Assembly (NCBI RefSeq): GCF_036588685.1
Contig: NC_086386.1
Location: forward strand, 60,698,001-60,762,000
Direction of reading: 5' to 3'
DNA: 64,000 bases
Source: Mytilus trossulus
Taxonomy: Eukaryota
Shown one piece after another: positions 527-63,748 of this stretch (within the stretch, counting starts at the first letter, position 1; every line of letters starts with the position of its first letter). The notes under the pieces were generated by a model. The model ran no database searches and was not told where the DNA came from. It saw nothing but the letters and a program-made list of their open reading frames with translations. The translations under genes were made by a program, and so were the position numbers.

Positions 527-3113
527 CTGAATATACCAATTCTGTATTATTATTTGAACAATGATTTCTTCCCCATCTTATATATGTTGTTCCAATGCCT
601 AAAATCAGAAATGTATTACAAATGCAAATTCAGAAATAAAGTGAATAGAGCCTATGTTTTGTCTACAATTTTCAAGGAGACATTTATGAAGTAAGAATAC
701 CATAATACATTATAAATATCGTGTGGAGTTAACACAAAGATTAACTATTCATGTTATCGTGTAACCACATTACACGTTGACTTAAAAATCTGATGAGGAA
801 TTATTGAAAGCATAACAAAAACATAGAGTATGAGGAAAACTTTTTATCAAATTTATAATTTTCTTCTATGTTGTTAGTATTACAGTCGTAGGCCATAATA
901 TTTGTAAATTGAACAATTTGACTCCTTGAAATATTTGAGATGACATAATTTTTCAAATGTTTTGCTATTTTTGTTGTAGGGAATTAAATAGCCATACAGA
1001 CCAGCGGGGTTTGGTGCAGTTTTTTTCATAAAAAAAAACACAAAAAATATGCTAGAGAACAAACGGCAATATCTCTTACCAATCCGTATAGACTCAGCGG
1101 TGAAGACAACATATGGAAATATTTCTTTGATTCACTCAAACTGTATCTATAATATTAACCCTTACGTATCTAGCTTCAGATGCCGATTCAGGATTTTGAT
1201 TAAAAAGGGGCACAAAGACAGAGTCATGAGTTAAACTTTATGTCTTAACAATATATTTAGCTCTTTAAATCGCGTTGTGTATATATGAAAGAGGAAGGAA
1301 ATACAGTGGCAGAGTCAAACTTATAGACGGAAAATAAACTGACAACGCAATGGCTAAAAATAAAAAGATAAACAAACAATTGCAAATAATAGTACAGAAG
1401 ACACAACATCGAACACTGAAGACTAAGCAACACGAACCCCACCAAAAACTTTGGGTGTTCTCAGGTGCTCCGGAAAGGTAAGCAGATCTTGCTCCACATG
1501 TGGCACCCGTTGTGTTTCTTGTGTTATTACAAATCCGGTAAATAGTCTAATTCGGTTGGTCACATTCATTAAAAGGGAAAGGGTATTGTAGTTGTAGGAA
1601 CATATTCGATATCATCTGTGAAACGATTATTCCATAGCGGTCGACCAACTCGTGATTGCGTCCTTATAATTTACGAAGGGATGATTTCAACTTCACCATT
1701 TGGAACTCTTGCTTCCTTGTGAGTAGCAATTCTCTATCAAGGAAATCATAATAGAAAATGCAAGCACGGGAATATCGTATCAATTGGGAGATATATACTC
1801 CGTCTGCAGGTGCTGCTGGAATGTTGCTACATAGAAATGGAAATTTCATAATTGTGAAGCTGAAATCATCTCTTTTGTCGTAAGATTTATTTTCAACCAG
1901 CCCTCATTGTAAATTTCTAGATGTATGTCAAGACTTCAGACAGACTTAGCTGTATCTGTAGCATCCTTTATCTCAAGTTCGATTGGATAGATTCGTTCAA
2001 CTTAGTCACCAAATTTTGTATTATTTAGTAAGAGAACATCATCTATATCGCAAAACGTAAAGTATACGGATATTGCTAACTTCTTATATTTCTGTATGAA
2101 GTCAACATCATTATAATAAAGAAACAAGTCGGCAAGAAGAAAGGCACAACTAATTTCCATTGGAATTCCGACAGTCTGTTGAAAAACACGTCCTCCAAAC
2201 GTAACAAAAATGTGTTCAATAAAGAAACTAAGCATCTTGATAATGTCAGTTTCAGAGAATTTTTGGTTTGAAACAGAGAAATTCTTTACAAAGTAGTATG
2301 TATCCCTCCCCAAGACAAAATACTTGTTTCTACGTTCGCAATTCTTTTTAATGAAACAAAGTTATACCAACTCTTTCAATTTGTCTTTAAGTTTGGAATG
2401 AAGAATATTTGTGTAGAGTGTAGAAAATTTAAATGTTTTAAGACTATTGCAAAATGAGAGAGTCTTAGATTGTTTGTACTCTAAAAGATCTTTGGTATTT
2501 TTTAGTATCAACATCTGATTCCCGACATGTATTATTGAAACTTTCGTTAAGCCGTCTATTTATATTTTGAAATATACAAATAAAATACACCTGAAATCCC
2601 TTGTGAGTAAAAGAGAGAAAGCTTTAAAAAAGCAATTACGATAATTTACTCAATGACATGGTTAAAGTTTTAATCTGGCTCTGCATGTTTCTGGTATTCA
2701 CTCTAAATATAAAACAATATGATCATTTAGCAAATTTGTTTTTATAGAATACAGCAATCAAGAACGAATATGATATTTGACTTACTGTGAAAAATGCTAT
2801 ATGAGTTCTGCAACAGTTTGATAGTCTGTTCCTGTTTTAAAATTAACTCATCGTGTTGCTGGATTGATATGTTCTGTTGATGGATTAATGTCTGATGTTG
2901 TTGATTGAGTTTTTCTTGATTCTGAATTGTTAAAGCTTGTTGTTGGTTCTCAGTAGAGAGCTGTTTCACTGTTGCATTCAATATAGCAACAATACTTTCC
3001 ACTCGACTCAACCGATTAATCAGCACATCTGGGTCATTTAGCAGTAACCTCTTGTCTTCTGTGGTGACCAGATTTACCTTAAAATAAAGAAAATATATTA
3101 ACAACAAAATCAT
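527..3113 (-). CDS. Paralog A (partial; exon 3 lies before the window): secreted coiled-coil + short-chain collagen C4-like domain protein. Exons 2786-3113 and 527-598
   Basis: ATG at 3113 gives MILLLIYFLYFKVNLVTTEDKRLLLNDPD and a Gln-rich coil; donor CAC A|gtaagt at 2785. The 72-nt exon 2 (IGTTYIRWGRNHCSNNNTELVYSG) has AG/GT boundaries and is homologous to the other copies. Confidence 0.85.
1288..2520 (-). mobile_element. Degenerate Penelope-like (Naiad-type) retroelement: RT fragment + 3' UTR (family 1)
   Basis: Remnants FVTFGGRVFQQTVGIPM..ADLFLYY..IDDVL and FPFLCSNIPAAPA.GVYISQLIRYSRAC; many frameshifts; lies in intron 1 of paralog A. Confidence 0.8.
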
Positions 3114-3149
3114 GGTTAGAAGAATGTTATTACCTATGAAGACATAAAG

Positions 3150-3200
3150 TGACACAGTTTGTATCTTATCATTCACGATTTAGAAAAGGTCACAAATGGT
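3150..3200 (-). promoter_or_regulatory. Conserved upstream module of the array genes (TGACCT-like motif + GATAAG); copy at paralog A
   Basis: GATAAG (plus-strand cttatc) at 3165, 9942, 15552, 31405, 39188, 53397 and 59848; same 52-nt offset from the ATG in A, C, D, F and G. Confidence 0.55.
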
Positions 3201-7199: not shown

Positions 7200-7268
7200 A
7201 TTTAATTTAATTTAATTTAATTTAATTTAATTTTACTTTATTTTATTTAATTTAATTTAATTTAATAT
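7200..7268. repeat. (ATTTA)n microsatellite
   Basis: Tandem tttaa pentamers. Confidence 0.9.
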
Positions 7269-7743: not shown

Positions 7744-9908
7744 TTACTTAGAACAAACTACACATGTCAGCGGATAATTGTTAATGTACGGTGGACATTT
7801 CAAAGATCCGCATACAGTAACAACGTCATAAAACAGTTTACCATAATGTTGAGCCGCACCTCCAATAACGTATTCTGGGTTTATATCAATGCATTCGTAA
7901 GTCGAAGCAGCGGCATTTTAATAACCTCCTGACGATAAATATCCATAATACTCTCTCTTCCATCCGCTGTAACATCTATCTTTTCCAGGAATCATTATCA
8001 CAGAAGTAGCTCGAGTCGTTCTACATAGTGCACATGGAACATCTTGACCATCAGCATAAGAGGAAAAAAAGTTATTATCGAATTCTCCACCATATATTTG
8101 AGCACTATTTGTACCTCTAGTTTTTAAATAATTTGGATCTGGTGGTAAACACACACTCTCAGATGCCGAGCCCGATACACCATAGTAACCCCCACCAGCA
8201 TATCCTGTAAAAAAGTATCTCGATATACATTCCAGTTGATGCATATCACATGTATTAACATATACGTATGGCACCAAATCAGTCATGCATGTAAGTCACA
8301 AAAAAATTAAAGTTTCCTGTCAGTGCAGCTAACGAGATAAGATTTTCAATCTATACGAAACTGCTGGTATATAATTATTTCTAATTGTGTACAGTGAAAA
8401 ACAGTTAAAACACAAAAAAGATTGACAAAGCAAATAAATAGCGCAGCCTGTAGTAGTTTAGAGTTGTGGCTATCAAAATAAAGGTACCAACAGGCAGTAT
8501 TATATTTGGAAAATCTTTTTACAATAGTGGTTGTAGTTTATAGATTTAGTTCATAAGTGTTTTCTCGTTTCTTTTTCTTTTATGTATATACAGTTGGTTA
8601 TCATGTTTAACTGGATTTACACTAGTCTTTTTTTTTTTTTGGGGGGGGGGGGGGTCCTTCATAGCTTGCTGATCGGCGTGAGTCAAGGCTCCGTGTTGAA
8701 GGCGGTTCTTTGACCTATAATTGATTTCATTTACAAATTGTGACTTGGTTGAACAGTTCTTTCATTGGCACTCATACCACATCTTCTGTCAACTGGTTAG
8801 TTATACGATAAGGGAAATTCAATTTTAAGAAACTTGAAATGAATAATATGTTAAATAAAATTAACTTCTTTACCTGAGTAAACCAATTCTGTATTATTTT
8901 TTGGACACTGCTTTCTTCCCCATCTAATATAAGTTGTTCCAAATTCTGAAATCAATGCAATGTTTGCTTGCTGATTATGGTAAATTTTTAATTAAAATAT
9001 TTTTGGAGAAAAAGTTAAAGTTCGAATTTGATTAACAACTTTTAAAAAAAATCTATTTCGGTCATATTTTACGAGATTTACAATAGAGCTAAGAAATATT
9101 TTGAAAAATAAATGTTAAGAAATTGTGTTTGAGTTCATAATAAACATTAGATATATTAAGTTTTAAATGACACTTAAGTTTGCAGAAAAATATATACAAA
9201 ATATTGTAAACACTCGATGTGGCAAATTATCGCAAATCATGTCAACTAAAACACGCTTGACATATCCTAAGCCTTTAATAATATGCATCGGAAAATATGT
9301 ATTACGAAAATATTTGACTTTGGCTTATTATATTTCATATCATATGTTTTGAAGTTTTAAAATAACGTCAGCAACAACAACAAAAAAGAATGCCTTGCTA
9401 TCTTTCTAAAACGTTTCACATAATTAATCCTGCGATGGATTTAATTTTTTTCTTCGAAGAAAAATGACACAAGAGTCTTACCTTGAGAACTGCTAAATGA
9501 CCCTTGTAATTGTTTGATTGTCTGCTCGTGTTGTTGGATCAATGTTTTTTTATGCTGGTTTGATGTCTGTTCTTGATAGATTGATATTTGTTGTTGATTG
9601 ATTAATGACTGTTGTTGTTGCGTTAACGTCTTCTGTTGTTGAATTGATGTCTGATGTTCAAGGATTGATGTCTGTTGTTGCTGAATTGTTTTCTCTTGCT
9701 GTTGAATAGTCAATCCCTGTTGTTGATTTTCAGTAGATAACTGTTTTACAGTAGCATTTAATATTGCAACAATATTTTCTACTCGGTTCAAACGATCAAT
9801 TAGTATGTCTTGGTCATTAATCAAAAACCTCTTCTCTTCCAAAGTGACCATGTTTACCTTAAAACAGAGGAAATAATATAAGCAGACAAATCTACTTAGA
9901 TGCACCAT
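7744..9908 (-). pseudogene. Paralog B, single premature stop. Exons 9482-9908 (or 9953), 8874-8945, 7744-8204
   Basis: Canonical GT-AG sites, both introns phase 1. Exon 3 is full length (461 nt) but has an in-frame TAA at 7918-7920 (SGGY*NAAASTYECID...CVVCSK*). The ATG used by the other copies is AGA (9893); upstream ATGs exist at 9908 and 9953. Confidence 0.85.
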
Positions 9909-11914
9909 GTTTGCTATTATATAATTCAACATAAACTGGTTCTTATCATTCATAAGTTATAAAAGGTCACAAAGTGTCTCACAATGTTATCATGTGTACG
10001 CCAACATGTACGTTAAAGAATCCCGATATGTATATGTTGGTCTTGTGCTGTTAGCTTTTCTTTAGTCGGGTTGTTGTCTCATTTTCCGTTTTCATTCTCT
10101 GAATATATGACTTATAATTACCAGATTCTAAATATTTCGTGAATTGTTGATGCTGCCAAAACAAGGAGGAAACGACATTCGGAATGTGTCTTACCCCTTG
10201 TTTTGGCAACACCTTTCATATCCAAATCCAAAAAAAAAATCATTTTTTTTAAATGATGTCATAGGTACCCCTTTCCTTTTAAAAATGTCTAAATCAAAGT
10301 TTTAATTTTGGGTACTACATGGTCTATGTATGATTTACGGGCGTTTTCTTTCGGAAATCTGAAGGTATATGAACAGATGTGAGAGGTTTTGTCAATGATA
10401 CAGATAGTAAATGTATACATATTCATGACATGTTACTTTAAAATTATAAAACAAAATTGTACTCTCAATCTCTTTCCCACTTGTTTTTATGGCGATGTCC
10501 CTTGCCACCATCTCACTGCATTTGTATACTCTTAATCATAACGAATTCGCTGTACCCATGTCTGAATTGATGTTATTGGGATTTAACATGTTTAATGAAG
10601 GTAATCTATGTATTAACCAAAAATCATTTAGTCACGGATTTCGTTTTCACATATTTCTTAAAAATCTAAACTAAATTCTTCCATATATGCAACGAGTTTG
10701 TTGAAAACTATGACTTAACCAGTAGAAAAAATAAATTTGTAACGCGATGAGCTGTCTAAATCCATCTACAATACGTTGTTTATAAGCCTCAAATTAACAT
10801 ACGATCTGGGTAAACTCATCGATACAAATTGGTGGTCTTCGGCTGTTGTCTGCGTTATCGTCAGTTTGTTGTCTCTTTGATACATTCCCCCATACCCATT
10901 CTCAATTTTACATTATCGTATTTCTATATCGTAAACGACAAGTTGAAAAAGTGATATATGTTTTAAAACGTTATTCCAAAAGAGCAGATTTGTTTCAACC
11001 TATCTCATAACACTAAATTGAATTGGCTTTTTTAATTAAATATTATTTTAATATTTCAATTTATATTGATAGCATTTTTTCAAATGTTTTTTTTTTCATT
11101 TTAAAACCAAAAAAAGACAACAAAAAAAATTATTTATTACCTGACAACACCGCACAGATATTTAGGAATCGAATAACTAAAAAGAAATCATTATTGCCAC
11201 AATATAAAAGTCTGAACAAAATCACATATGATATAAATTTAAAAATCAAAACATTCAGATCCTGTCCGACATGTGCCATCCGTCGTGTTATACGTACAAA
11301 CCGAGTGATAAGTCTAATTCTACATGCCAAATTCGTTGAAAAGGAGAACGGAATTTTGTTAACGGCATTGTTACGTCGTCATCTTTGAAACAGAAATTTT
11401 AAAAATAGTCAACTACGTTGTAGCTTGGGATGGCGTCGTTTATTTTAATTTTTTTGAAGGGATGACTTGCATCTTAAGTACTTGGAGCTTGTTATTATAA
11501 AATTATGAAACACGAAGCCTGTATTATCGTAACACATGGGAGATATATACTCTATAATTATTGACTTTAGATTTTAACGACTCTGACTGATCAAGTGATA
11601 ATTCAAACAAAACGTACTATTTCGCAGCTCTCGGTTCACATTTGTTGATTAACATTTCATAAGACTGATCAGGTAAATGAAATTATTATTTACCTTGTGT
11701 TAATTTATAATATTGAGAATGATATTTGAATAGCGTAAAAACCATGTATACCAGCTTTCCACTGAAGTAAAAAAATATTCTAAAAGAAATAATCAGTCAT
11801 ACTTTGCATTATTAAAATTGTTGTTTACGCTACATGTTTATTTCTTTGGGATACTTACTATATGGTATATTTTGACAATAGTGAACAAAAAGGTGAAACA
11901 TGCTACACACAGGA

Positions 11915-13095: not shown

Positions 13096-13332
13096 CTAAG
13101 GATGGTTTTTAGAAATGAATCGTCATAATCATTAGTCATATGCCTCAACAATTGTTTCCAAAAAAACCAGATATTAAAACCTTTTATTCCGGTATTCAAA
13201 CGGAAAACACATGGAAGGTTCGTATACTGTAATGAGACTACCTTTATCGGCTATAATTGTCAAGACGTGATTTAAAGCATTCATTTAACTAACGAGTAAA
13301 TATATATTTTATTATTCCTTTCTTGTCATCTA

Positions 13333-15500
13333 TCACTTAGAACAGACTACGCATGTTAGTGGATAATTGTCAATGTACGGTGGACATTTCAATGATCCAC
13401 ATCTGGAAAGAACTTCATAAAACAATTTACCAAGATGCTGATCAACACCCCCAATGATATATTCTGGGTTGAGCTCAACACATACGTAAGCCGTAGCTGC
13501 TGCATGAACATGATTCCCGGACGCTAAATATCCATGATATTCTATCTTCCAGCCCTTGTAACATGTATTTTTTCCGGGAATCATTACAACAGATGTGGCA
13601 CGTTCTGCTCAACAGAGAGTCTTCATCGTTAGCATTGGAGGCAAAAAAGTTCGAGTCAAATTCTGCACCGAACATACGACTATATTCTCCCCCACTAGTT
13701 TTTACATAATTTGGATCTGGTGGTAGACATACATATTCAGCAGCTGCGCCTGGATCAGTATAGTGACTCCCACCTGCAAAGCCTGTAATAGTTATGTAAC
13801 ATCAGTATGGAAAAATAATAAATGCATACTTAGTAATCGGGAAATAATCCACATAATATTTTAAAACAATGAACAGTAGTTTATGTGAAATACTCGTATA
13901 CTAGTATAATAAATGAAGGAAACATTAATCTTATACTTGAAGTAATAGGCAATGGGATGATATATTTTCTAATTGAAATGTGTAAAATTGAAAACACAAT
14001 GATGCTAAAATATCACAGATTTAAAACTACCAACTACGAGTATCAAAACTCTGCATTTGATATATTAAACCTATATGAAAAAGTAAAACCACTAAAATAG
14101 TTATCAAATTAAGATACCAGGATTATAATTTAGTACGCCAGACGCGCGTTTCGTCTACATAAGACTCATCAGTGACGCTCATATCAAAATATTTATAAAG
14201 CCAAACATGAACAAAGTTGAAGAGCATTGATGATCCAAAATTTCCAAAAGTTGTGCCAAATACGGCTAAGGAAATACTGAACTAAGAGGAAAATCAAATC
14301 GGAAAGTCCATAATCAAATGGCAAAATCAAATAACAAAAAACATCAAAAACGAATGGACAAGAACTGTCATATTCCTGACTTGGTATAGGCATTTTCAAA
14401 TGTATAACATGGTGGATTAAACATGGTGTTAAAGCGCTAACCCTCTCGCTTTGATGACAGTCACATCGAATACCGTTTTATTTAAAATGATGCCTGAACT
14501 AAACAGACATAATAAATAAAATAGTCAAAATATGGGAACAGCAGTCATCATCGTGTTACAATTATAAAAGGAACAATTTAACAGAACACAAAAACATCTA
14601 TCTACAAAGTGTAACATATTTACCGGAATATATCAATTCTGTATTATTATTTGGACACTGCTTTCTTCCCCATCTAATATAAGTTGTTCCGATACCTGAA
14701 ATAAAGTAGATAATGATTGGTGTATTTCAAATAGACCATAGACACATGTTATGTTGATTGATTGGTTGCTTATTCAGACATGAAACCTTAAAACAATGCT
14801 ATGTTAAATACCATGTTTATGATACAATGGCATTTACGACACAATGGTTTCTTCAGTTAAAAGCACACTGAAGTACTCAAGTTGTAATAATTGTTTTACA
14901 GGTGAACTGAACAAGAAAGGCAAGAGATTGTTATATCTTCACATCAGCCAGATCAATTAGTCACACTCACACGAGTTAACAAAATATGCAGTTATACGTT
15001 GTTTGCTTGACTTTACGATTGTGTTTGGATCTTTTGTAAATTCTCTTCTTTATGAAAAAAGTCTTACTTGGAATGGTGTTAAATGAGCTTTGCAAAAGTT
15101 TAATTGTCTGCTCCTGTTGTTGATTTATTATCTGTTGTTGTTGATTTATTGTTTGGTGTTGTTGGATGGTGTTCTGTTGTTGTTGCATTAATGCCTGTTG
15201 TTGTTGAAGTGTTGCCTGTTGCTGTTGAATTGATGCGTTTTGTTGTGTAATCCATGCCTGTTGCTGAAGTGTTGATGTCTGATGTTGCTGAATGATTTTC
15301 TCTGGCTGTTGATTAGTTAACATCTGCTGTTGGTTTTCGATGAAGAACTGTTTTACTGTGGCATTCATTATTGCAACGATATTTTCAATTCGGTTCAAAC
15401 GATTAACGAGTACATCTGGATCATTAAGCAATAGCCTCTTCTCTTCTGAGGTGACCAGATTAACACTAAAACAAAAGAAATATATTAACCAAATGATCAT
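13333..15500 (-). pseudogene. Paralog C, frameshifted. Exons 15068-15500, 14624-14695, 13333-13782
   Basis: Exons 1 and 2 are intact. Exon 3 is 450 nt versus 461: an 11-nt deletion near 13620 removes the VPC codons, and TGA replaces the Arg codon at 13609-13611 in the ancestral frame. Confidence 0.87.
14135..14178 (-). ncRNA. Minimal type-I hammerhead ribozyme (retrozyme repeat, family 1)
   Basis: GCGUCA-CUGAUGA-GUCU(UAUGU)AGAC-GAAA-C(GCGC)G-UC-UGGCGU: complete catalytic core, stems I and II paired, palindromic loop 3, GUC cleavage triplet. Confidence 0.88.
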
Positions 15501-33505: not shown

Positions 33506-33844
33506 TTACGTAGAACAGACTACACATGTCAATGGATAGTTGTTAATGTACGGTGGACATTTCAGAGATCCACATCTGGTATCCATGATATTCAACCTTC
33601 CAACCACTGTAACAAGTTTTTTTTCCAGGAATCATTTTAACAGATGTAGCCCGATCAGTTATACATAGAGCACAAGGGACGTCCTCAGCATCGGAATTGG
33701 AGGCATAGAAGTTCGTGTAAAATTCAGCACCGTTCATACGACCCCCGTCTGGCCTTCTAGTCTTTTCATAATTGGGATCTGGTGGTAAACATACATATTC
33801 AGCAGCCGAGCCTGTTTCTCTATAATAGCCGCAACCTGCATAGC
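33506..33844 (-). pseudogene. Orphan duplicated exon 3 (E') with a 122-nt internal deletion
   Basis: AG acceptor, then YAGCGYYRETGSAAEYVCLPPDP...EYHGY fused out of frame to RCGSLKCPPY...CVVCST*; part of a ~0.9-kb local duplication with 34870-35810. Confidence 0.85.
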
Positions 33845-48990: not shown

Positions 48991-51900
48991 TTATTTTGAA
49001 CAAACGACGCATGTTAGTGGGTAATTGTTAATGTATGGTGGACATTTCAGAGATCCGCATTTCGTTACAACGTTATATAAGAGTTTACCAAGATGTTGAT
49101 CAACACCTCCGATAATATACTCTGGCTGTATGTCAACACAAACGTAAGCAGTAGCAGATGCATCCCCATAATATCCAGAAGCTAAATATCCATGAAATTC
49201 CATCTTCCAGCCACTGTAACATGTATTCTTTCCAGGAATCATTATAACAGACGTAGCTTGAGTCGTTCTACAGAGAGCACAAGGGACATCCTCATCGTCA
49301 GCATTGGAAGCAAAAAAGTTGGAGTTAAATTCTGCACCGTACATTCGTCCATGATCTGATCCACTGGTCTTTTCATAATTTGGATCAGGTGGTAAACAAA
49401 CGTATTCAGAAGCGCTGCCTGATTCACTATACTGGCCACCACCAGCATAACCTGTGAAGTAAAATTGACCATGCATTCTCTTAACAAAACTTTTTGTTTT
49501 AAATACTAAGGCTTGTCTACCTAAGGAATATATTTCATTTGCTGCATTTGACAAAACCTTGACTGAATTTTGGTCCTCAATGCTCTTCAACTTCGTATTT
49601 TATTGCCATTTTAACTTTCTCGGAGGGAATTGGGCATCACTGATGAGTCTTTTGCAAACGAAACGCGCGTCTGGCTTTAAATACATAATTCAACCGTGGT
49701 ATTTATGATGAGTTAATACACAAAACGTTGTTTGAATAAAAGTTTCGATAAATATAAAAAGATTTTCTCATTTTTAGGCTTCCTTTACGTGAAAGCATAA
49801 AACCAGCATATATGTTCAAACGGTGTCAAACGGCTGCTATAATACAATTTCTTAAAATTTACAATGAAAAACTGATACAACTGTTATAATCACAATGTTT
49901 TTTTCTTGATCGATAACACTTATTCTCGTTGCGCGGTTAAAACAGTTAATATTATGTACATAATATAGTACTTTGAAAACAGCAGTGTTGTGATATAAAG
50001 ACTGCGAAATGTCAATTGTTTTGTTTTGAACGAACGTTGAAGTCAAAAATACATACTGTATCAATGCATATATATATATATATATACAACTCGTCTAAAC
50101 ATCAACCCAACAATGTTAAATCTGTAAATTTGCTTTCGCAAATTTTTGGTTCTTCCCTCGGCGGGATTCGAACCCATGCTACTGTGATATCGTGACGCCA
50201 AATCGCCTGCACTGCAGCCGTCCCGCTAGACCACACAACCACTTGGGCTCTCAAAAAAAAGAGCTTTCGCTGGCCGTGTGTTACCTTGCCACGTCAGTTT
50301 TAATCTAGCGGCGTACTACAGTACATGATATATAAGGCATGCAGATGTTAATGTTACAGATCAGCTAAATTATCTATAGTAAAGGATCCTAGAGTTGTAC
50401 TCAGACGTACTTATATATATATACATTATGTACACAGCCATGTATCACCATCATTGATGGCGATCCGATGGATACATCTGTTGTAGAGTTGTCACTGACT
50501 CAGACGTACTTATATATATATATATATGTATGGGAATTAAGATCCATTATGTTACATCTTGTGATCAATTTGATTCGGCAATCTCCAATGGCAGTCAGCA
50601 GGGTTAAAGAACATCAGTTGTTAGAACTGTTAGTCAAATGCGTTTTGTTTAAATATACTTTTTCACTTTTTTTGGTCTTTTGGAAAATGTTATTTGTGCT
50701 GTTTATAGACCCTTCTTCAACGAAATTTGTTTACATGCACACGTATAAAAATTGCGGTTTTTATCCAACGCAATCATAGCCTAGGTTTGAACGTAGTTTT
50801 CAATTTAGACTCGTATATATGAGAATAATATACAGTTAACTACTACAAATAGATACAGAAACAGTCTTGACCAAGGGCCGAAAGGAAAAGTCGAATCAGT
50901 ATCCTCTTTTAGTGCACATCATTTTTCGCAAAGATATTTTCGCAAAGATATTTTCGCAAATAAAGTGTTATAGCTATACTAAAAGATATATAAATATATT
51001 CCATTAAAAATGATAGCATTTTCAGAATAAAGCGCCACCTGATTCATACAACAACTCAACTCAATTATCACAAAACTTTTTTAGAGTCTATTGTCGTGCT
51101 ACAATCTAAGCTTTATAAATCAGTGTACATTGGTCTACTCGAAGTATTAAATCAGCCTTAGCAAGAAAGTGGTCAAAATATTTCTGAAACTGTAACCGAA
51201 ATCAAAAATCTTTAAAAATAATAAATGTCAATCTTAATGCACCAGCTCCAGATGCGAATTTCAGTTATTAATGTCACGATAGTGATACATGTATTTGCGG
51301 ACAAAATAAATGATAGACCAATGCTTTGAACAAATATTCCTTGCATATTTTATGACGTGTTTTTAAAATAAAAATATCTGTTCATCTCCGCTTTTTGATG
51401 ATTGTTCTAGCTAGATATACGTACGGACATAATTCAAGCATTAATAATATATGATACATCTAATCAATCATATTTTTCTACCTGAATAAACTAATTCTGT
51501 ACGATTACTTGGGCACTGCTTTCTTCCCCATCTGATATAAGTTGCGCCAAAATCTGAAATCGACATGATGATGTTTGTTGTTTAGTTGAGGTTCTGTCAA
51601 CATACTTATACATTGCAAATTAGTTTTATTTTGTATGAAAAAAAGTTATAACGTGATTCTCGGAGATAAATATTGTCTGAAGTACTTTGTTCTGATGGTT
51701 CTACAAGTTTTACAATTGCATATACCTCAGACCTTTAGGTGCGAGATAATATATATAAAGTGTTCAGAGGTCAAATGTTTTTCACCATTTGAGATAACGC
51801 AATACATAAACAAATTTCTTATTTCTACTGAAGATAGTTCTTGTCTGCATTAAATTAAATGTTTGCATAAAATTCAGAATTTCTGTTAATTTCTGTATAT

Positions 51901-53345
51901 CATGCAATTATTATGAAGTTAATTTATGATTTACATTTTTTGGAAATTCACTGCTTAAATACAGATATGAAATTTTGCACGATAAATTATTTGGCTACAA
52001 AAGGAAAAATACACGAAGTTTCAAGTTTCAATCTTAACTACAATCCCCTTCCCTTTCATGAATTCGACATACCGAATTAGACTATTTACCGGATTTGTAA
52101 TCACATAAGCAACACGACGGGTGCCGCATGTGGAGCAGGATATGCTTACCCTTCCGGAGCACCTGCGATCACCCCTAGTTTTTGGTGGGGTTCGTGTTGT
52201 TTATTCTTTAGTTTTCTATGTTGTGTCATGTGTACTATTGTTTTTCTGTTTGTCTTTTTCATTTTTAGCCATGGCGTTGTCAGTTTGTTTTAGATTTATT
52301 AGTTTGACTGTCCCTTTGGTATCTTTCGTCCCTCTTTTCAATACATAATGATAACTCAGTTTATTTCTAACTATACGTAATGGGATTTGATCATTGTTTA
52401 AGGTCGTACGGTGACCTATATTTGTTCATTTCTGTGTCATTTGGTCTCTTGTGCAGATTTGTCTCATTGGCAATCATACCAATCTTCATTTTTATGTATA
52501 ATGTTTAATAAATTCATTTTTAAGCGATAAAGTTATGCAAATATTTTCACTTTTTTTCTTCAAAATAACCATAATGAACTGACCAAATTTAGACTTTAAC
52601 TTTGACTTTTAATTAAATTCGGGCCTCACATACGTTTCAAAAATTATTTTTTTAATTTTTGAACAGCAGTATACTACTGTTGCCTTTATTTATATGAAAT
52701 ATTAAGGGACATTTTTTGCTTGAAGACTGTATTATGATCAATCGAAGATTTGAATAAACAGAGCACATGCGTATGATATAACTTCTCAAGTTTCTTAATT
52801 TAAGTATGTTTCTACACAGATATCGTTATCCTTAATGAAAATGACCTTTTATGATTACTATATTATATAGTTTGTCAATTTGTTTTTGTAATGATAAGGC
52901 AATGATAATTTTTATTTCAATGTTCAAAGAAAAAATGCAAGAAAAATAATCGAAAACTATTCTATTTCTTAAAATATTCACTTAATAGATTATGTTCAGA
53001 ATTTTTATGATATATATTTTATGACTTCAGAGTCTTACTTTGAGTGCTGCTTACTGATCCTTGTACTTGTTTAATAGTCTTCTCGAATTGGTTGATCAAT
53101 GCCTGTTGTTGTTGGATTGAAGTCTGTTGTTGCTGAATAATTTTCTCTTGCTGCTGATTTGTTACTGTCTGTTGTTGGTTTTCAGTAGTTAACTGTTTAA
53201 CTGTAGCATTAAGTATCGCCACGATATTTTCAACTCGGTTCAGCCGATTAACCAATACATCTGGATCATTGAGCAGTATTCTCTTTTCTTCTGTGCTGAC
53301 CAGATAAACCTTAAAACAAAGAAAATATATTAACCACAATATCAT
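48991..53345 (-). CDS. Paralog F, intact: secreted coiled-coil + short-chain collagen C4-like domain protein, 279 aa. join(53039-53345, 51482-51553, 48991-49451)
   Basis: MILWLIYFLCFKVYLVSTEEKR...; exons 307+72+461 nt in frame, canonical splice sites, no stops. Confidence 0.9.
49634..49677 (+). ncRNA. Hammerhead ribozyme family 1; core intact, stems partly mispaired
   Basis: GCAUCA-CUGAUGA-GUCU(UUUGC)AAAC-GAAA-C(GCGC)G-UC-UGGCUU; in intron 2 of paralog F, antisense to the gene. Confidence 0.7.
50087..50510 (-). mobile_element. Repeat containing a tRNA(Leu/Ser-like)-derived segment, embedded in (TA)n
   Basis: The minus strand of 50153-50248 has A-box-like TGGTTGTGTGGTCTAG and B-box GGTTCGAATCCC; (TA)n tracts on both sides. 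Confidence 0.6.
52037..52340 (+). mobile_element. 3' end of Penelope-like family 1
   Basis: Reverse complement of 4838-5130; in intron 1 of paralog F. Confidence 0.7.
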
Positions 53346-56810: not shown

Positions 56811-57200
56811 CGAATGCTGAAGTGTGTATAGGCATTCCAATTTTCATTGTTAGCATTTTTATCTCAACTATTTATTACATAAACGTACATATATGGGTCA
56901 TGTTTGAGTTTTCTGTGTAGTTGAGTTGAAGGAGTAAGATGTTTGTCTTTTATTGGCTTTTTTCTGACAATGTTTTTGTCTTTTTATTAGACTCTAAATG
57001 TAGTCCTTTTCCCTTTTGATGTTATAACTCCATGTAGCAACGACCAATTCAAAATGTCAGTGACTAAAGTATAAGAATGTTGTTGGCTCTTTTTATATAG
57101 AAATACAAGTGTTTTTGACTATCGATTCCTGCAAATCCGACAACTTATTTGAGCATTTATATTAAAAACACGAATCTGTATTTTGATATCTTTTATTTTA

Positions 57201-59796
57201 TTACTTAGAACAGACTACACATGTCAATGGATAATCGTTGATGTACGGTGGACATTTCAAAGATCCGCATTTGGAAAGAACTTCATAAAAAAGTTTACCA
57301 TAATGTTGATCAACGCCTCCCATAATGTATTCAGGTTGTATGTCAACGCAGACGAAAGCAGAAGCAACGTTTTCAACGTGATGACCAGAGGCTAAGTATC
57401 CGTGATATTCCTCTTTCCATCCACTGTAACATGTATTCTTCCCAGGAATCATGATCACAGATGAAGCACGAAGAGTTCTACAAAGAGCACATGGGACGTC
57501 CTGGTTATCAGAATTGGAAGCAAAAAAGTTTGAGTCAAATTCTCCACCGAACATACGACCATAATCTGACCCACTAGTCTTTACATAATTTGGATCTGGT
57601 GGTAAGCATACATATTCAGCAGGCGAGCCTGGATCGCTATATTGACCACCACCTGCAAAACCTGTGATTAAAAAAAAGAATAAGTGATAATTAAATATGT
57701 TATGTTTATATGTATACTATGCTGTTTTGTATCGTAGATTGATTATACTTTCACACGTGTAAATTCAAGTAAAATAAGATTTTTCTTATCAAATATGATC
57801 AAAGATAAACAGCATAGTATTATCATTTCATCTACATGATACTAGATAAATCAGTGGGTCTCTAATGAAAGTAGTTTACAAGTAAAATCAATAGTGAAGT
57901 TACAGAGCATTGTTAACAATTCAACAGGATAGAACACAAACCCGACACATTAAATCAGGGACGTATATATATTTTAAGTCCTTGCATTAAATATACCGAA
58001 AGATTAAAAACTCTACGATATGAGCAAGGAAATTATGATTGGCACATTACTTAGGAAGCTCTGCGCTACAACAGTAACAAGCTAATGTGGCCACAGTTTT
58101 TGCATTGTTAACAATTCAAAAGGATAGAACACAAACCCGACACATTAAATATACCGAAAGATTAAAAACTCTAAGATATGAGCAAGGAAATTATGATTGG
58201 CACATTACTTAGGAAGCACGGATAAAATATCTGCGCTACAACAGTAACAAGCTAATGTGGCCACAGTTTTTGTTGAATGCTGTCGTTCAAGTAACAACAA
58301 AGATCAGAAACATCACTGCTAAGTTGTATTGAGCAAGGAATTGTATAGTTATACTATTCCTCGTATTGACACACAAAGACATACGTAAGGGTCTGGATTG
58401 GGATTACATATACAGATCTCGTGCGCTTTAAATAGTAAAATTCAAAAGAAAATAAGGGGGTTTTAATTTATAGAATAGAGAATAATGGGCAAGTGAAATT
58501 AAAGAATACTGGAATAATGACCGCGATAAACACGCTCAAATATATAAAGTAGTATTATCTAAAGTATTGATAGTGAAACCGATGAGGCTTACCTTACAAT
58601 CATATCTGAATATTGAGGTCTTGAAACAGAAATTCATAATTCAATCTAACATAAGCACGAAGGGGAATAGCAAGACAAAGATATACACTTGTCACTAGAA
58701 ATCTTCAATGACAGAATACCCGTTCAGCTGTTAGGATTGAAGATTAGACAAGAGATCTCGTTGGAGTTATTTGATTCTGATTTTAATTAATTTTGTATCA
58801 TAAATTTAAATCACATTCTTACCTGAGTAGACTAATTCTGTGCTGTTAATTGGACATTGCTTTCTTCCCCATCTAATATACGTTGTTCCAATGCCTGGAA
58901 TATTTATTTTTAATTCGGACATATTGTAAGCACATAAACAATTATGGAATTCTGCAATTCAACATGAGTTTAGTGTAAAATACACAAATTCGCTAAATAA
59001 ACGAAAATCCAAACAACTCGTTGTTATAGTGAAATTATGAATTACCAAAGACAAAGTTTTAATATAAGACGTGTATCAAGGTTTAAATCCCAATTATATC
59101 GACTGAAGAGAAACGTTAAATGCCTTTTCTATTGTAATATGCATGACATCACATTACAAAGGGCTCAGTGATGTTCAAAAGATAAAATGGAGAAGTAGTG
59201 TATATAATATCATTATATCTAAATAGTTCTGCAGTGTATTTCTTTTTAATTTTAACTTGATTAATATCGTAATACACGGGTTAAAATTTAAGCTTGTTTT
59301 TATGGAGCAACAGATGAAGACATAAGGGCATCTTTTCAAATTAACAATGTATGAACAATATTCCTTAACTGATACAATTTTCAATATCTTTCACTTTTGA
59401 AATCTCGAATTATTAGCTAAAGACGGTACCTTGCCATCTTAAAAAGAGAAGATAAAAACCATATCTTTTTGTCTGTTAGAGTTGTGATTTCTTTTATAAT
59501 CTAGTTGTCAAATAAAGCGGATTTTTAATAAATAGTAAGTTAAAAGTATGAATTATAAACATAAAAGTCTTACTTTGAGTAGTACTAACATAATCGTGTA
59601 ACTGTTTAATAGTCTTTTCCTGTTTCTGAATTGTGATTGACTGCTGTTGTACTGTGTTATTGAGTACCGCCACGACACTTTCTAGTCGGTTTAACCGATT
59701 TACCAGTACATCTGGGTCATTCAGCAATAACCTCTTGTCTTCTGTGGTGACCAGATAAACCTTAATAAAAAGAAAATATATTAACCATGCAATCAT
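57201..59796 (-). CDS. Paralog G, intact: secreted coiled-coil + short-chain collagen C4-like domain protein, 251 aa. join(59574-59796, 58823-58894, 57201-57661)
   Basis: MIAWLIYFLFIKVYLVTTEDKR...; exons 223+72+461 nt in frame, canonical splice sites. Confidence 0.9.
57907..58272. repeat. Tandem duplication of about 195 bp with indels, intron 2 of paralog G
   Basis: gcattgttaacaattcaa.aggatagaacacaaacccgacacattaaat ... gctaatgtggccacagtttttg occurs twice. Confidence 0.85.
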
Positions 59797-61356
59797 TGTA
59801 AGACGTCTATTATCAGCTATGAGGAAATAGAGTGACACAAATTCATCCTTATCATTCTAGAGATAGAAAAGGTCATAAAGGATATCAGAAGGTTTAGCTT
59901 TAATGGTATACAAATGTCTTACTATTTCGATGTGCATATGACATATTTATAGAAAAGTGTAGTTTTGCTCTAATTATGTTGACGAATTGTATAAACGACT
60001 GATTCAATATCCTCTGTCTATAAATAACTCCGGCCATAATGTTAGACTAGTAGGTAGTATCTAGCGCATAGAAATTCAAATATTGAGGTGCAAAATGTGA
60101 CTAAACTAGTAATTTTTTTATCGTCCATTCTACTACTAAACAAGATATTAAGTCATATTCGGTCTGGTTGGAATGTTAAACATATTTTTCTGGTTATTTA
60201 AAAACTTAAAATGTTTATTCTTACAATCGAAAAGAGTAGCATGATACAGATAAAATTATGTGGTATGAGCGTTAATGAGACAACTCTCCATCGAAGTCAC
60301 AATTTGTAAGAGTAAACCATTATAAGTCAAAGTACGATCTGCAAAACTGAGCCTTTGTTCACAGCAAAAAGCAAGCTTTAAAGGGACACTAAAAGAGAAT
60401 AGTGTTAAACCATTCGAACGGGAATACCAACGATATAATGGAGAGGTGGGTGGGAGAAAGTGTTTTTTGAATTTTGTTTGACAAAATTCAGCTTTAAAGA
60501 CAGAATTTTTATTTTCAACATAGAATAAAATGTTAATTGTCGCGACAAATTCGAAACTTTGAATCCATTTTAGCGGCCTCACATGCAGATCAACAAAGAA
60601 TCGAACAGAAATCAACCGTTTTGATGGTTTTAGATGTTCCATGTCGGTTTTAGATGTTCCATACTGAAACTTAGACACTTTCAAGTCTTTGATAGTTTAT
60701 AATGATAACTAGGTGTGTTGTTAATCAATTGATGCCAAATGACTGGCAATATTTTGAAATGTCCTTTTAATGATTCCCTTTGACTCAACCAACTTAATGA
60801 AGATTACTATCATTTTACTGTTGTTCACTCAAGATCTTTTGTGTTAATGTCCGAATTTATTTTGTACGTTGCTGTATTAAAACTTCTTTGAATTATAACA
60901 ACAAATAATAGAGTGCCGGAGAGAACGGTTTTATATTGATCAGCATTTTTCAAATGACGTTGAGTCCGGCAACTATGAGTCGCCGTATGACCCTTAACAA
61001 TGATCAAAATCCATACCGTAAATCCAGTTTAAGGGGAAAATAATACAAATGAAAACACCAACCAAAAAATGTCCCATTAAGGATTTAAAGTTGATTGGAC
61101 TTCAACTTTACTAAAAACTACCTTGACCAAAAACGTTAACCTGAAGCAGGACAGACGGACGGGCGAAAGAACGGACGCAGAGACTGAACAAAATAACACC
61201 ACTAGGCGGGGCATAAAAACAAAACATATATAACAGACGTCAGACATCAACCAAAGACAATAAAAATTACTAGCTCCTGACTTGGAACAGGCACGTGCAT
61301 ATATCACTATAGAATCTGGCGAGAATCACTGTTTACGGATCGATCAAAATTGTTAA

Positions 61357-61571
61357 GGGACGACATCAAAAGATAAAAAAAAATTTAAATCAAATAGTTT
61401 GGGGTGGGGGTTAACATTGCTGCAAGTTTTATTAATCTAAAATCGATTTTACATATATCCCTATTGGTCAATAATTTTTTTCCAAATTAAGTTAAGAAGG
61501 GGTGTGTGAGGTCAGTGAAAAAACTAAATGAATTAAGTTTGTTATCCTTCATTGAACTTTTGATGTGACCC
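61357..61571. mobile_element. Small MITE, possibly Kolobok-type
   Basis: ttaa|GGGACGACATCAAAAG ... CTTTTGATGTGACCC|ctaa imperfect terminal inverted repeats. Confidence 0.45.
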
Positions 61572-62543
61572 CTAAGGGGTTAAGGTCTAAAAAAAAGTTG
61601 GACGTCTATGATTATTTCTGTATTTATCCACGTTTAATTTATTAAGAACTTTAAACTGAGGTTGAATTCTGCTGAAATTAATAAAACTACTAAGCGAGTT
61701 CTAATGCGGCATGTGACAGATGCGCTCTGTAATTGACTAAGATTGTCAGTACTTCTATAATATATATATATAGTATTACATCATAATTCTAATAACAGAT
61801 GCCATCAGAGAAATATTAAGACGCAATGTATTACGAAGTTCCATTGCAAAGATACAATCCTGAAAATTATTTCATTGATATTTTTGTAGTTGGTCTTTTA
61901 ACGTTACTTGTATCTTAGATTGTCGAAATTCAAATGCAATTCAGTTATGTTTGCATAGTTTTTAAGTTTCAGTGAATATATTGGTGTATGCCACTGCATA
62001 TCGCGATATGATAACAATGTCGTCAATGAGAGACAGGACCTCTGGCGTTGTTGGGATTTATAATCGTATGCATATTGTCAAAATAAAAAACAAAGTTAGC
62101 ATCAAATACTGTACCGAAACGATTAGAGGAAAAGATTTGTTCGGTAGCGTCATGGAGAATATGGTTCAAGATTGTTTATGTCCCCATCGTAAGCAACGGG
62201 TGGGTCATAAAGTGTGACCATTGACCGTGCCCCTTTTCGTCTTTCCATTCAATATTCGCGTTCACACTCTCGCTTTATTTTTCCTCATCCAAATCTAAGA
62301 ACCACAACACGCAGAAAAAGAAATCAGTTTTTTAATTAGGAAAATGGAAAGCCTCAGTGCGGGCATTCGTGTTCTTAGACACATGTTTCTTTTATGACAC
62401 TTTTCTTTTTTTGCATTCGAGAGATTTGAGATGAAGTCTTTTCTTGCTAAAGTTTAGTTCTTTCCATTCGCTTGTGCAGGGGAGTGTTGAGATAAATAAG
62501 TAACACAAAAAACATAAATTTGGTTTTTTTCTTAAATTTATGT

Positions 62544-63748
62544 TTACTTAGAACAAACTACGCAAGTCAGAGGATAGTTGTTCTTATATGGTGGACACTT
62601 CAAAGAACCGCATTTGGTAAGAACTTCAAAAAAGAGTTTACCAAGATTTTGATTTACGCCTCCTATAACATACTCTGGCTTTATATCAACGCAAACATAA
62701 GTTGTAGCAGCTTCATTACCATAATGTCCTGATGACAAATATCCATGATATTCTACCTTCCAGCCACTGTAACACGTGTTCTTTCCTGGAATCATTATAG
62801 CTGTGTTAGCATGATTTGTGCGACAGAGAGCACAAGGGACGTCTTCACCTACAGCATCAGAAGCATAAAAATTGGTGTAAAATTCTGCGCCGTACATTCG
62901 GCCATGATCCCCACCACTAGTTTTAACATAGTTTGGGTCTGGTGGTAGACAAACGTATTCGACAGTCGCTCCTGTTTCGATGTGCTGACCCCCACCTGCA
63001 TACCCTAAAGTTACACAAAACATTGCATACTACTAATGGTATTCAAATACATGTTGCACATGGGTTATATAAACATAAAAAGATGTTTTAAATTGTTGTG
63101 TGATTTATTTTTTTTAAACAGCTAGATTTCAAATGTACGACTCATTGTCTCTGTTGATTGATTTTTTTGCTTTACATTTTCGTTATTTCTGTGTGTATCG
63201 TGTGCTGTTTATTGGTTATTATAACGGTTATTCAATTTTTGTAAATTGGAATAACTTGTGTTTCACGATTCTTTTGAACACTTAGCAATACTACCTTATC
63301 TTTGAACTACTATTAATTGAAAACAAGACTTAAAATTAAGCATTTAACCAACAGTTATAAGTTTGGTCGCATTAAATCAAATTAATCCGTTTCTTTAAAT
63401 TTTCCTGAACAGAACAATGTAACTTTAAACTAAACTGATCAAAATATTTTTTAGCATTTGGTAGCTATACAATAAAACTTGGAAAAGACTATCTTAGTTT
63501 GATTAACTTATGTCTCATCCCTTTTGCCTATTTAAGCAAATAAAATATGTTTAAACTAAACAAAAAACCTATAGTCCACCTTGCAATGTATATGCATTTT
63601 TAAAAGAGGACAAGCACAAGGTATATTTCAATTGGTTAAACTTGAGGTGAAATTGCATATCAAATCTATAGTATACCTGAGTACACAAGCTCTGTATTAT
63701 TATTTGGGCACTGTTTTCTTCCCCATATAATGTAAGTTGCTCCAGAAT
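62544..63748 (-). CDS. Paralog H (partial; exon 1 lies beyond the window). Exons 63677-63748, 62544-63004
   Basis: 72-nt exon 2 (SGATYIIWGRKQCPNNNTELVYSG) and an uninterrupted 461-nt exon 3 ending CVVCSK*. Confidence 0.87.

What the first reader, a model, noticed from the sequence alone, without database searches (positions are those of the whole stretch)
527..63748. Tandem array of collagen-free 'short-chain collagen C4-like' secreted proteins: candidate uncharacterised recognition family
Seen: eight same-strand paralogs with identical exon plan (signal peptide, coiled coil, 10-Cys head) and no Gly-X-Y repeat. Three of the six complete copies are disabled. Established: bivalve C1qDC, FReD and C-type lectin families use the same coiled-coil stalk + globular head design and expand in tandem. 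Inference: this is an analogous oligomeric lectin/pattern-recognition (or matrix-binding) family built on a spongin/NC1-related head, which automatic pipelines would label as collagen.
Basis: partly seen in the sequence, partly recalled or inferred. Interest (0 to 1): 0.85.

Follow-up and report, generated by a model that had tools for sequence, protein, structure and literature searches.

The report
Collagen-less spongin-NC1 coiled-coil gene array
A mussel chromosome carries an old tandem array of genes for secreted proteins in which a heptad coiled coil replaces the collagen helix in front of a collagen-IV-related head, so "short-chain collagen C4-like" is a misnomer and their function is still unknown.

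Summary
On the minus strand there are nine loci, ten counting flanks. Each has the same three-exon plan: exon 1 is a signal peptide plus a Q-rich heptad stalk, exon 2 is 72 nt with Cys 1, and exon 3 holds Cys 2-10.

- **Intact:** D, F, G and H. A is open but has lost an invariant Cys.
- **Disabled:** B (in-frame TAA), C (11-bp deletion), E (frameshifts and stops) and E' (exon 3 only, 122-bp deletion).
- **No collagen:** no reading frame holds four consecutive Gly-X-Y triplets.
- **Transcribed:** spliced contigs from four runs in three studies join G's three exons directly and also cover H. RefSeq's Mytilus trossulus LOC134696631 matches G exactly.

The head is the spongin-type NC1 domain. A head profile hits Gly-X-Y short-chain collagens of amphioxus and sea anemones at about 1e-46 to 1e-51, with all ten Cys invariant. 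Foldseek's top hits are all collagen IV NC1. Pfam has no model for it.

A homotrimer is predicted (0.88 against a best control of 0.43). Stalk lengths in the array differ only by whole heptads. The genome holds at least 151 head exons. The paralogues are old (dS 0.7-2.1) and under purifying selection (dN/dS about 0.14).

A recognition or lectin role remains untested inference.

The parts
2786..3113 (-). Copy A exon 1: signal peptide plus a heptad stalk of 89 aa from the KR anchor to the exon end.
527..598 (-). Copy A exon 2 (72 nt, AG/GT flanks; CP changed to CS). Exon 3 lies 185-643 bp left of the window (L001 5357-5815). It is an open frame, but the invariant CALC motif reads CALY.
9482..9953 (-). 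Copy B exon 1. The likely start codon is at 9908, with an upstream in-frame ATG at 9953. The stalk is 117 aa and contains a 21-nt tandem repeat at 9556-9688.
8874..8945 (-). Copy B exon 2.
7744..8204 (-). Copy B exon 3, disabled by an in-frame TAA (GGY*NAAAS; the ORF stops at 7918). The M. galloprovincialis partner P0021 is intact.
15068..15500 (-). Copy C exon 1. The stalk is 124 aa, the longest in the array, with 21-nt repeats at 15115-15266.
14624..14695 (-). Copy C exon 2.
13333..13782 (-). Copy C exon 3, disabled by an 11-bp deletion that removes the VPC codons and shifts the frame.
31089..31353 (-). Copy D exon 1 (stalk 68 aa).
28886..28957 (-). Copy D exon 2.
27765..28228 (-). Copy D exon 3, intact; 98% identical to the head in M. 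edulis P0001.
33512..33844 (-). Fragment E': exon 3 only, with a 122-bp internal deletion and a frameshift.
34954..35410 (-). Copy E exon 3: two 1-bp deletions, one 3-bp deletion, in-frame stops and a degenerate acceptor.
38022..39150 (-). Copy E remnants of exon 1 (39025-39150) and exon 2 (around 38114-38122), both degenerate.
53039..53345 (-). Copy F exon 1 (stalk 82 aa).
51482..51553 (-). Copy F exon 2.
48991..49451 (-). Copy F exon 3, intact; 93% identical to M. coruscus P0002.
59574..59862 (-). Copy G exon 1. The ATG is at 59796, the stalk is 54 aa (the shortest), and RNA contigs reach 59862 as 5' UTR.
58823..58894 (-). Copy G exon 2. RNA contigs from four runs join it to exons 1 and 3.
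57177..57661 (-). Copy G exon 3 with a short 3' UTR, intact. The three exon translations occur verbatim in RefSeq M. trossulus LOC134696631 (P0008, 251 aa).
63677..63748 (-). Copy H exon 2. Exon 1 lies just right of the window, at L002 147-418, which equals window 64147-64418.
62537..63004 (-). Copy H exon 3 with 3' UTR, intact and transcribed. Contigs cover 62537-63006 and carry a T-run loose end at 62537, which is a poly(A) tail on the minus strand.

Best explanation
The window holds most of an old, birth-and-death tandem array in Mytilus trossulus (chromosome-scale contig C14). Its genes encode secreted 'lollipop' proteins that are collagen-less derivatives of the spongin short-chain collagen family.

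**Shown**
- Each gene has three exons.
- Exon 1 gives a cleavable-looking signal peptide and a Q-rich heptad stalk.
- Exons 2 and 3 give a roughly 175-aa, 10-Cys head that is homologous to the NC1 domain of Gly-X-Y-bearing short-chain collagens and resembles the collagen IV NC1 fold.
- The mRNA contains no collagen exon.
- Copies differ in stalk length only by whole heptads.

**Predicted**
- Three chains zip into a parallel coiled coil, and the three heads close into a ring as in the NC1 trimer. The coiled coil therefore does the trimerising job that the collagen helix does in true spongins.

**Inferred**
- The trimeric head is the working end, a multivalent extracellular binding module.
- I lean to a soluble or mucosal recognition role (about 0.4) over a matrix-assembly role (about 0.3).

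The confidence given (0.6) is for the whole statement. The identity and architecture part alone I put at about 0.85.
For: - **Gene models and lesions:**
- **Transcription and splicing:** contigs from four runs in three studies join 59862-59573 | 58893-58821 | 57659-57177, with GT..AG introns of 679 and 1161 nt. H's exon 3 is covered and has a poly(A)-type end.
- **Independent annotation:** the RefSeq protein P0008 contains G's three exon translations exactly.
- **No collagen:** no Gly-X-Y run in the window, and no Pfam Collagen hit in mollusc members, whereas amphioxus and Nematostella relatives do hit it.
- **Head homology:** the profile finds 3538 cluster representatives. Eight of the top 150 carry 8-31 Gly-X-Y triplets and are named short-chain collagen C4. 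All ten Cys are invariant across Mytilus, scallop, oyster, gastropod, amphioxus and anemone proteins. This matches the published count of 7 + 3 Cys for spongin NC1 (PMC5395295).
- **Fold:** the AF2 model has pLDDT 87.8, with a helix at 28-119 and a beta head at 128-300. The Foldseek hits with E <= 1e-3 are all collagen IV NC1 (best E 4e-4, prob 0.98). VIA-align gives Z 7.1 at rmsd 4.7 A over 151 residues.
- **Trimer:** ipSAE 0.88 against a best control of 0.43, with heptad-spaced contacts at 28-125 and head-to-head-neighbour contacts. The runs agree in at least 97% of contacts and pLDDT is at least 89. The mark was reached by 21 of 30 solved homo-pairs and 0 of 23 solved single chains, and the calibration used two copies, not three.
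- **Heptad register:** 21-nt repeats lie in exon 1. Anchor-to-exon-end lengths are 54, 61, 68, 82, 89, 117 and 124 aa, all congruent to 5 mod 7.
- **Family size:** at least 151 head-exon matches in this genome, in many clusters.
- **Age and selection:** dS is 0.7-2.1 and mean dN/dS is 0.14. B, D, F, G and H each pair with one protein of another Mytilus record with starred support.
Against: - No binding, localisation or oligomer measurement exists. The trimer is a model score, only the trimer was tried, and resemblance to solved NC1 trimers could help it pass from memory.
- The fold match is moderate: Z about 7, low TM because the long helix is included, and no Pfam C4 or PDB sequence hit.
- Strong purifying selection and single partners in other species are not what a rapidly diversifying receptor repertoire would show.
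- Sites that vary among paralogues are not enriched at the predicted interface.
- The runs used are only guessed to be RNA and are coded, so tissue and condition are unknown.
Confidence: 0.6

Rival explanations
1. Matrix or secreted-material role. The trimers are structural building blocks, for example of gill or mantle extracellular matrix, mucus or another secreted structure. They would join end to end through NC1 head-to-head contacts as collagen IV and spongin do, with the stalk acting as a spacer of set length.
For: - The head belongs to a family whose known members are matrix collagens (PMC5395295).
- Purifying selection is strong (dN/dS 0.14) and most copies have a single partner in another species.
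- Stalk length varies in discrete heptads, as expected of a ruler.
Against: - At least 151 head exons with many pseudogenes is unusual for structural matrix genes.
- Spongin NC1 lacks the collagen IV domain-swap region and HSQ motif (PMC5395295).
- Nematostella spongin-like genes are expressed mainly in neuroglandular cells, not with the fibrillar collagens (PMC12549020).
- Head-to-head assembly was not tested here.
Confidence: 0.3
2. These are ordinary short-chain collagens whose Gly-X-Y exon was missed, so the 'collagen' annotation is right.
For: Database names read 'short-chain collagen C4-like'.
Against: - There are 0 Gly-X-Y runs of four or more triplets in all six frames of the 64 kb window.
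- Spliced contigs join exon 1 directly to exon 2 and exon 3.
- The RefSeq model has the same three exons.
- None of the 120 closest homologues has a run of six or more triplets, and mollusc members have no Pfam Collagen hit.
Confidence: 0.02
3. The array is mostly a decaying relic. The expressed copies are leftovers without a current function.
For: Five of ten loci are disabled and A has lost an invariant Cys.
Against: - Open copies show dN/dS of 0.07-0.24 at dS near 1.
- B, D, F, G and H each have a close counterpart in another Mytilus record.
- G and H are spliced and expressed in several samples.
- The stalks keep heptad register.
Confidence: 0.05

Closest known systems
Spongin short-chain collagens / SSCC-related proteins (Ephydatia 'short-chain collagen C4'; Aouacheria et al. 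2006; Fidler et al. 2017, PMC5395295)
   Same: The C-terminal head is the same. The profile gives E of about 1e-46 to 1e-51 to Gly-X-Y-bearing amphioxus and anemone members, identity is 35-38%, all ten Cys are invariant, and the head starts at the same boundary right after the stalk.
   Different: There is no collagen triple-helix region at all. A heptad coiled coil of 54-124 aa sits in its place. By definition these proteins are not collagens. The collagen-less form is found in mussels, scallops, oysters, clams, a freshwater mussel and a gastropod.
Collagen IV NC1 domain (Pfam C4, PF01413; e.g. PDB 1LI1, 1M3D, 5NAX, 8TYS)
   Same: It gives the best structural matches (Foldseek E 4e-4, prob 0.98; VIA Z 7.1). 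The head splits into two subdomains that each align to an NC1 subdomain, and a ring-like trimer is predicted.
   Different: There is no sequence-level hit to Pfam C4 or to PDB NC1 chains. It has 10 Cys rather than 12 and is shorter, at about 175 aa against about 225. The literature reports that spongin NC1 lacks the HSQ motif and the domain-swap region.
Bivalve C1q-domain, fibrinogen-related and collectin-type proteins (signal peptide + coiled-coil neck + trimeric globular head)
   Same: The overall design is the same, the genes are massively expanded in tandem, and pseudogenes are present. That many mussel C1q proteins also carry a coiled coil where vertebrate C1q has collagen is from my own knowledge and was not checked here.
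   Different: The head fold is unrelated, with no C1q, FReD or C-type lectin Pfam hit. No ligand is known. This is an analogy of design, not membership.

Membership tests
Spongin short-chain collagen (SSCC) family | C-terminal NC1-type domain with the spongin pattern of ten conserved cysteines | tested here: met
   The head profile hits collagen-bearing 'short-chain collagen C4' proteins at 1e-46 to 1e-51. C137, C166, C205, C208, C225, C252, C279, C284, C295 and C298 are invariant in alignment A3. The published count is 7 + 3 Cys.
Spongin short-chain collagen (SSCC) family | Short collagenous (Gly-X-Y) domain N-terminal to NC1 | tested here: not met
   There are 0 Gly-X-Y runs of four or more triplets in six frames of the window. 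The spliced mRNA of G has only three exons. Mollusc members have no Pfam Collagen hit, whereas amphioxus and Nematostella members do.
Spongin short-chain collagen (SSCC) family | Secreted (N-terminal signal peptide) | tested here: inconclusive
   A 17-18-residue hydrophobic N-terminus precedes a polar block in every copy, and AF2 models a separate helix at 2-13. No dedicated signal-peptide predictor was available.
Collagen IV NC1 (Pfam C4, PF01413) | Match to the C4 profile or to NC1 sequences | tested here: not met
   No Pfam hit even at E <= 10. Neither phmmer nor hmmsearch against PDB sequences finds an NC1 chain.
Collagen IV NC1 (Pfam C4, PF01413) | NC1 fold made of two related beta subdomains | tested here: met
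   Foldseek's hits with E <= 1e-3 are all NC1 chains (best E 4e-4, prob 0.98). VIA gives Z 7.1, 6.4 and 5.6 over 147-156 residues. Sub-alignments place 127-212 and 214-300 on single NC1 subdomains. The strength is moderate.
Collagen IV NC1 (Pfam C4, PF01413) | Trimer cap, then head-to-head hexamer stabilised by chloride and a sulfilimine bond | tested here: inconclusive
   A homotrimer is predicted (0.88 against control 0.43). The hexamer, chloride sites and crosslink residues were not tested.
Coiled-coil plus globular-head recognition proteins of bivalves (C1qDC, FReD, collectin-like) | C1q, fibrinogen-related or C-type lectin head domain | tested here: not met
   No such Pfam domain is present. 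Only the overall design is shared.
Coiled-coil plus globular-head recognition proteins of bivalves (C1qDC, FReD, collectin-like) | Binding of glycans or microbes; induction on challenge | not testable with these tools
The only indirect hint is a gill-specific 'Short-chain collagen C4' transcript in M. galloprovincialis (PMC4581086).

The most novel reading that the evidence does not exclude
The spongin-NC1 head has been recruited in molluscs as a fourth large family of soluble trimeric recognition proteins, beside C1qDC, FReD and C-type lectins. Co-expressed neighbours would form homo- and heterotrimers. NC1 would select the chains as it does in collagen IV, and stalks set in whole heptads would place the heads at different reaches. 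The result would be a combinatorial repertoire.
Probability: 0.2. Interest if true: 0.8.

Novelty: new variant of a known kind. Interest (0 to 1): 0.5.

Why it matters
The role of spongin-related NC1 proteins outside sponges is, from my memory of the 2006 paper that defined them (not held in the library here), an open question.

This locus shows three things. In mussels, and in other molluscs, the family has dropped the collagen helix for a coiled coil. It has expanded to well over a hundred loci. It is transcribed and kept under purifying selection.

The finding has practical consequences:
- It corrects a widespread annotation, because 'short-chain collagen C4-like' is counted as collagen or ECM in bivalve transcriptome studies.
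- It points to a domain that has no Pfam model.
- It offers small, secreted, easily expressed trimers for testing what an NC1-type head binds.

It also gives a second example of exchanging a collagen stalk for a coiled-coil stalk in front of a trimeric head. The exact whole-heptad length series within one array is a clean natural illustration of register constraint.

Tried and rejected
- **Pfam on the head and on full-length relatives:** nothing for the head.
- **PDB sequence searches with one sequence and with a profile:** no NC1 hit, only weak coiled-coil noise.
- **Head-only AF2 model from alignment A2:** pLDDT 51, so it was unusable and not searched.
- **pdb_via_wide on the full model:** the list was filled by long helices and says nothing about the head.
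- **Paralogue-variable sites against the predicted trimer interface:** no enrichment (odds ratio 1.5, p = 0.38).
- **Three other head clusters of the same genome** (C6, C9, C5; 8-10 kb upstream fetched): no Gly-X-Y run there either. I did not find a collagen-bearing member in this genome, but I sampled only three clusters.
- **Rfam on the whole window:** no family.
- **The search of earlier findings by place and by words:** nothing.
- **Aouacheria et al. 2006:** not held in the library.
- **Joined spliced models:** none was sent to any search tool. Exons were used by reference, and full-length database proteins (P0009, P0008) stood in for the joined proteins.
- **Oligomer states:** only the trimer was tested. 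Dimer, tetramer, heterotrimer and head-to-head hexamer were not.


Full report
**Where and what**

The window is G000 contig C14:60698001-60762000 of a 1.30-Gb genome. It has 32% G+C and no N runs. The RefSeq protein P0008 (M. trossulus LOC134696631, 'uncharacterized protein', 251 aa) contains the translations of copy G's three exons verbatim. The organism is therefore M. trossulus.

**Checking the observation**

ORF listing, tblastn and motif scans show that every copy is on the minus strand.

- *Exon 1* encodes a 17-18-residue hydrophobic start, a conserved block (..EEKRLLLNDPDVLVNRLNR..NAT..), and then a Q-rich region. It ends at a phase-1 donor G|GTAAG.
- *Exon 2* is exactly 72 nt with AG/GT flanks in all seven copies that have it. 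It encodes ..GTTYIRWGRKQCPNNNTELVYS with Cys 1 and an N-x-T site.
- *Exon 3* starts after an AG acceptor, again in phase 1. It encodes the remaining nine Cys and ends in CVVCSK-stop.

From high to low coordinate the loci are H, G, F, E, E', D, C, B and A. A's exon 3 and H's exon 1 lie 185-643 bp and 147-418 bp outside the window. One more decayed copy lies about 24 kb to the left.

Status of the copies:

| Copy | State |
|---|---|
| D, F, G, H | Open reading frames |
| A | Open, but the invariant CALC motif reads CALY and CP reads CS |
| B | In-frame TAA |
| C | 11-bp deletion with frameshift |
| E | Two 1-bp deletions, one 3-bp deletion, and stops |
| E' | Exon 3 only, with a 122-bp deletion |

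No frame of the window holds even four consecutive Gly-X-Y triplets.

**Transcription and gene model**

One run search found 24 runs holding 6-12% of the sampled words, which is about the size of the exons. Laying four of them, from three studies, gave contigs of 406-867 nt. These contigs join 59862-59573, 58893-58821 and 57659-57177. The skipped parts are 679 and 1161 nt with CT..AC ends on the plus strand, which is GT..AG on the gene's strand.

That is exactly the three-exon model of G, with nothing inserted between stalk and head. H's exon 3 (62537-63006) is also covered. It continues through 175 unplaced letters (consistent with H's exon 2 and the end of its exon 1, neither of which lay in the stretch searched) into a paralogue-like exon 1, and it carries a T-run loose end at 62537, a poly(A) tail on the minus strand.

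The runs are only guessed to be RNA, but spliced and tailed contigs can hardly be anything else. The run ids are coded, so tissue is unknown. Contig depth cannot rank expression.

**What the head is**

Pfam has no model for it, even at E <= 10. PDB sequence searches find no NC1 chain.

Close homologues come from Mytilus, scallops, oysters and clams. They share the architecture, and many are named 'short-chain collagen C4-like'.

A head-only profile (A2) was run against 1.84 billion cluster representatives. It found 3538 hits at E <= 1e-3 and 732 at E <= 1e-30.

Among the top 150, eight carry 8-31 Gly-X-Y triplets directly in front of the head. They are amphioxus, Nematostella and Actinia proteins named short-chain collagen C4, and they hit Pfam Collagen. 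A search started from one of them adds collagen-bearing members from Lingula, Amphiura, Ptychodera and Exaiptasia. The oyster hits in that list have no collagen domain.

In a joint alignment all ten Cys, the RWG motif and 34 columns in all are invariant. The Gly-X-Y region of the collagens ends where the Q-rich stalk of the mussel proteins ends. Fidler et al. count seven Cys shared with collagen IV plus three that are spongin-specific (PMC5395295), which is the same total of ten.

Structure agrees. The AF2 model of the M. galloprovincialis homologue most similar to A (P0009, pLDDT 87.8) has one helix at 28-119 and a beta head at 128-300. The Foldseek hits with E <= 1e-3 are all collagen IV NC1 chains, with best E 4e-4 and prob 0.98. 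The second look gives Z of 7.1, 6.4 and 5.6 with rmsd 4.7-4.9 A over 147-156 residues. Residues 127-212 and 214-300 each align to a single NC1 subdomain.

The structural match is moderate. The decisive link is the sequence homology to true short-chain collagens.

**The stalk**

Tandem Repeats Finder reports 21-nt repeats, that is one heptad each, inside exon 1 of B and C. Measured from the conserved KR anchor to the exon end, the seven copies have 54 (G), 61 (H), 68 (D), 82 (F), 89 (A), 117 (B) and 124 (C) residues. All are 5 mod 7, so they differ by 1, 1, 2, 1, 4 and 1 heptads.

Repeat slippage explains how the lengths change. That no copy is out of register argues that register matters.

A three-copy prediction of residues 26-300 of P0009 scored 0.88 against 0.43 for the best of three controls. 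Contacts are heptad-spaced at 28-125, and loop 167-188 of one head packs on 219-224 and 273-294 of the next. The runs agree in at least 97% of contacts and pLDDT is at least 89. The mark was reached by 21 of 30 solved homo-pairs and 0 of 23 solved single chains.

There are caveats. The calibration used two copies, solved NC1 trimers may help the model from memory, and no other stoichiometry was tried.

**Evolution**

This genome has at least 151 head-exon matches. That is a lower bound, since only 150 of 259 candidates were scored. They lie in many clusters on C1, C5-C10, C12-C14 and other contigs.

Within the array, exon-3 dS is 0.69-2.1 and dN/dS is 0.07-0.24, with a mean of 0.14. In a tree with heads from other Mytilus records, the pairings with starred support are as follows:

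| Window copy | Partner |
|---|---|
| D | M. edulis P0001 (98% identity) |
| F | M. coruscus P0002 (93%) |
| B | M. galloprovincialis P0021 (94%, intact) |
| H | M. galloprovincialis P0010 |
| G | M. trossulus P0008 (its own RefSeq model, so not a cross-species pairing) |

A's nearest row is P0009 at 89%, without support. The duplications therefore predate the Mytilus species, and B's stop is a recent, lineage- or haplotype-specific event.

The collagen-less form also occurs in Ostrea, Crassostrea, Sinanodonta, Mercenaria and the gastropod Babylonia. Amphioxus has further variants without a collagen domain. One of them combines a Pfam F5/8 type C domain with a match to this head profile (P0242). 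The head therefore behaves as a mobile module.

**How it most likely works**

*Shown:* a secretory-type N-terminus, N-x-T sites, a heptad stalk, a spongin-type NC1 head, and splicing without a collagen exon.

*Predicted:* a parallel three-stranded coiled coil about 8-19 nm long, carrying a closed ring of three two-lobed heads. The coiled coil substitutes for the collagen helix as the trimerising rod.

*Inferred:* the head is a multivalent extracellular binding surface.

Three points favour a recognition role. The family's size and pseudogene turnover fit it. A 'Short-chain collagen C4' transcript is among the top gill-specific messages in M. galloprovincialis, beside C1q, perlucin, apextrin and fucolectin (PMC4581086; that transcript cannot be tied to this array). 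Nematostella spongin-like genes are expressed in neuroglandular cells (PMC12549020).

Three points favour a matrix role. The family is ancestrally a matrix family, selection is purifying and most copies have single partners in other species, and the stalk series looks like a ruler.

I put recognition at about 0.4, a matrix or secreted-material role at about 0.3, and the rest open.

**Comparison and novelty**

The proteins fail the defining collagen feature of spongin short-chain collagens but carry their NC1 head. They resemble collagen IV NC1 in fold but not in profile. They share only their design with C1qDC- or FReD-type proteins.

I found no paper describing the collagen-less coiled-coil form. 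Twelve papers in the library mention 'short-chain collagen C4', all as an annotation label. The 2006 paper that defined the family is not held, so prior mention there cannot be excluded.

Verdict: a real, transcribed, mis-named family, and a new variant of a known kind. Interest is moderate.

**Procedural notes**

Noticed in passing
window 47019-48578 (+), also 42277-42648 (+): A 519-aa ORF carries Pfam DUF1759 and DUF1758 (putative peptidase) and weak aspartyl-protease hits. I read it, from memory, as the Gag-protease part of a BEL/Pao-type LTR retrotransposon. It lies between copies E and F. The 123-aa coiled-coil ORF upstream may or may not belong to it.
   Followed up: partly
window 24583-25218 (+) and 2002-2313 (-): Two ORFs share a ..APL(I/L)ADLFLY.. 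motif and have no Pfam hit. They are probably fragments of one repeat family, possibly reverse-transcriptase-like. One sits in the C-D spacer and the other in A's second intron.
   Followed up: partly
window 60135-60333 and 60931-61328 (G-H spacer): Contig depth here is in the hundreds to thousands in all four runs, against about 5-30 on the gene exons, and many loose ends are present. Most likely these are transcribed or high-copy repeats. Rfam gives no hit.
   Followed up: partly
window 54128-54390: A 137-bp tandem repeat with 1.9 copies at 87% identity lies in the F-G spacer.
   Followed up: no
P0242 (amphioxus hybrid record, 403 aa): A protein with precomputed Pfam F5/8 type C (PF00754) and PF22633 whose residues 242-403 match the head profile. 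It suggests the head is shuffled onto N-terminal modules other than collagen or coiled coil. The sequence itself was not inspected.
   Followed up: no
G000 C5:63.63-63.86 Mb, C6:32.37-32.56 Mb, C9:6.99-7.06 and 9.60-9.71 Mb (L003-L005): Further clusters where only profile positions of about 80-164 match in one piece. In these subfamilies the head is split into more exons. No Gly-X-Y run was seen within 8-10 kb in the three loci sampled.
   Followed up: partly
P0001 (M. edulis, 267 aa): This annotated protein fuses a frame of the E/E'-like pseudogene remnant to a D-like gene. It looks like a chimeric gene model, and it suggests that M. edulis has the same pseudogene-next-to-D arrangement.
   Followed up: partly
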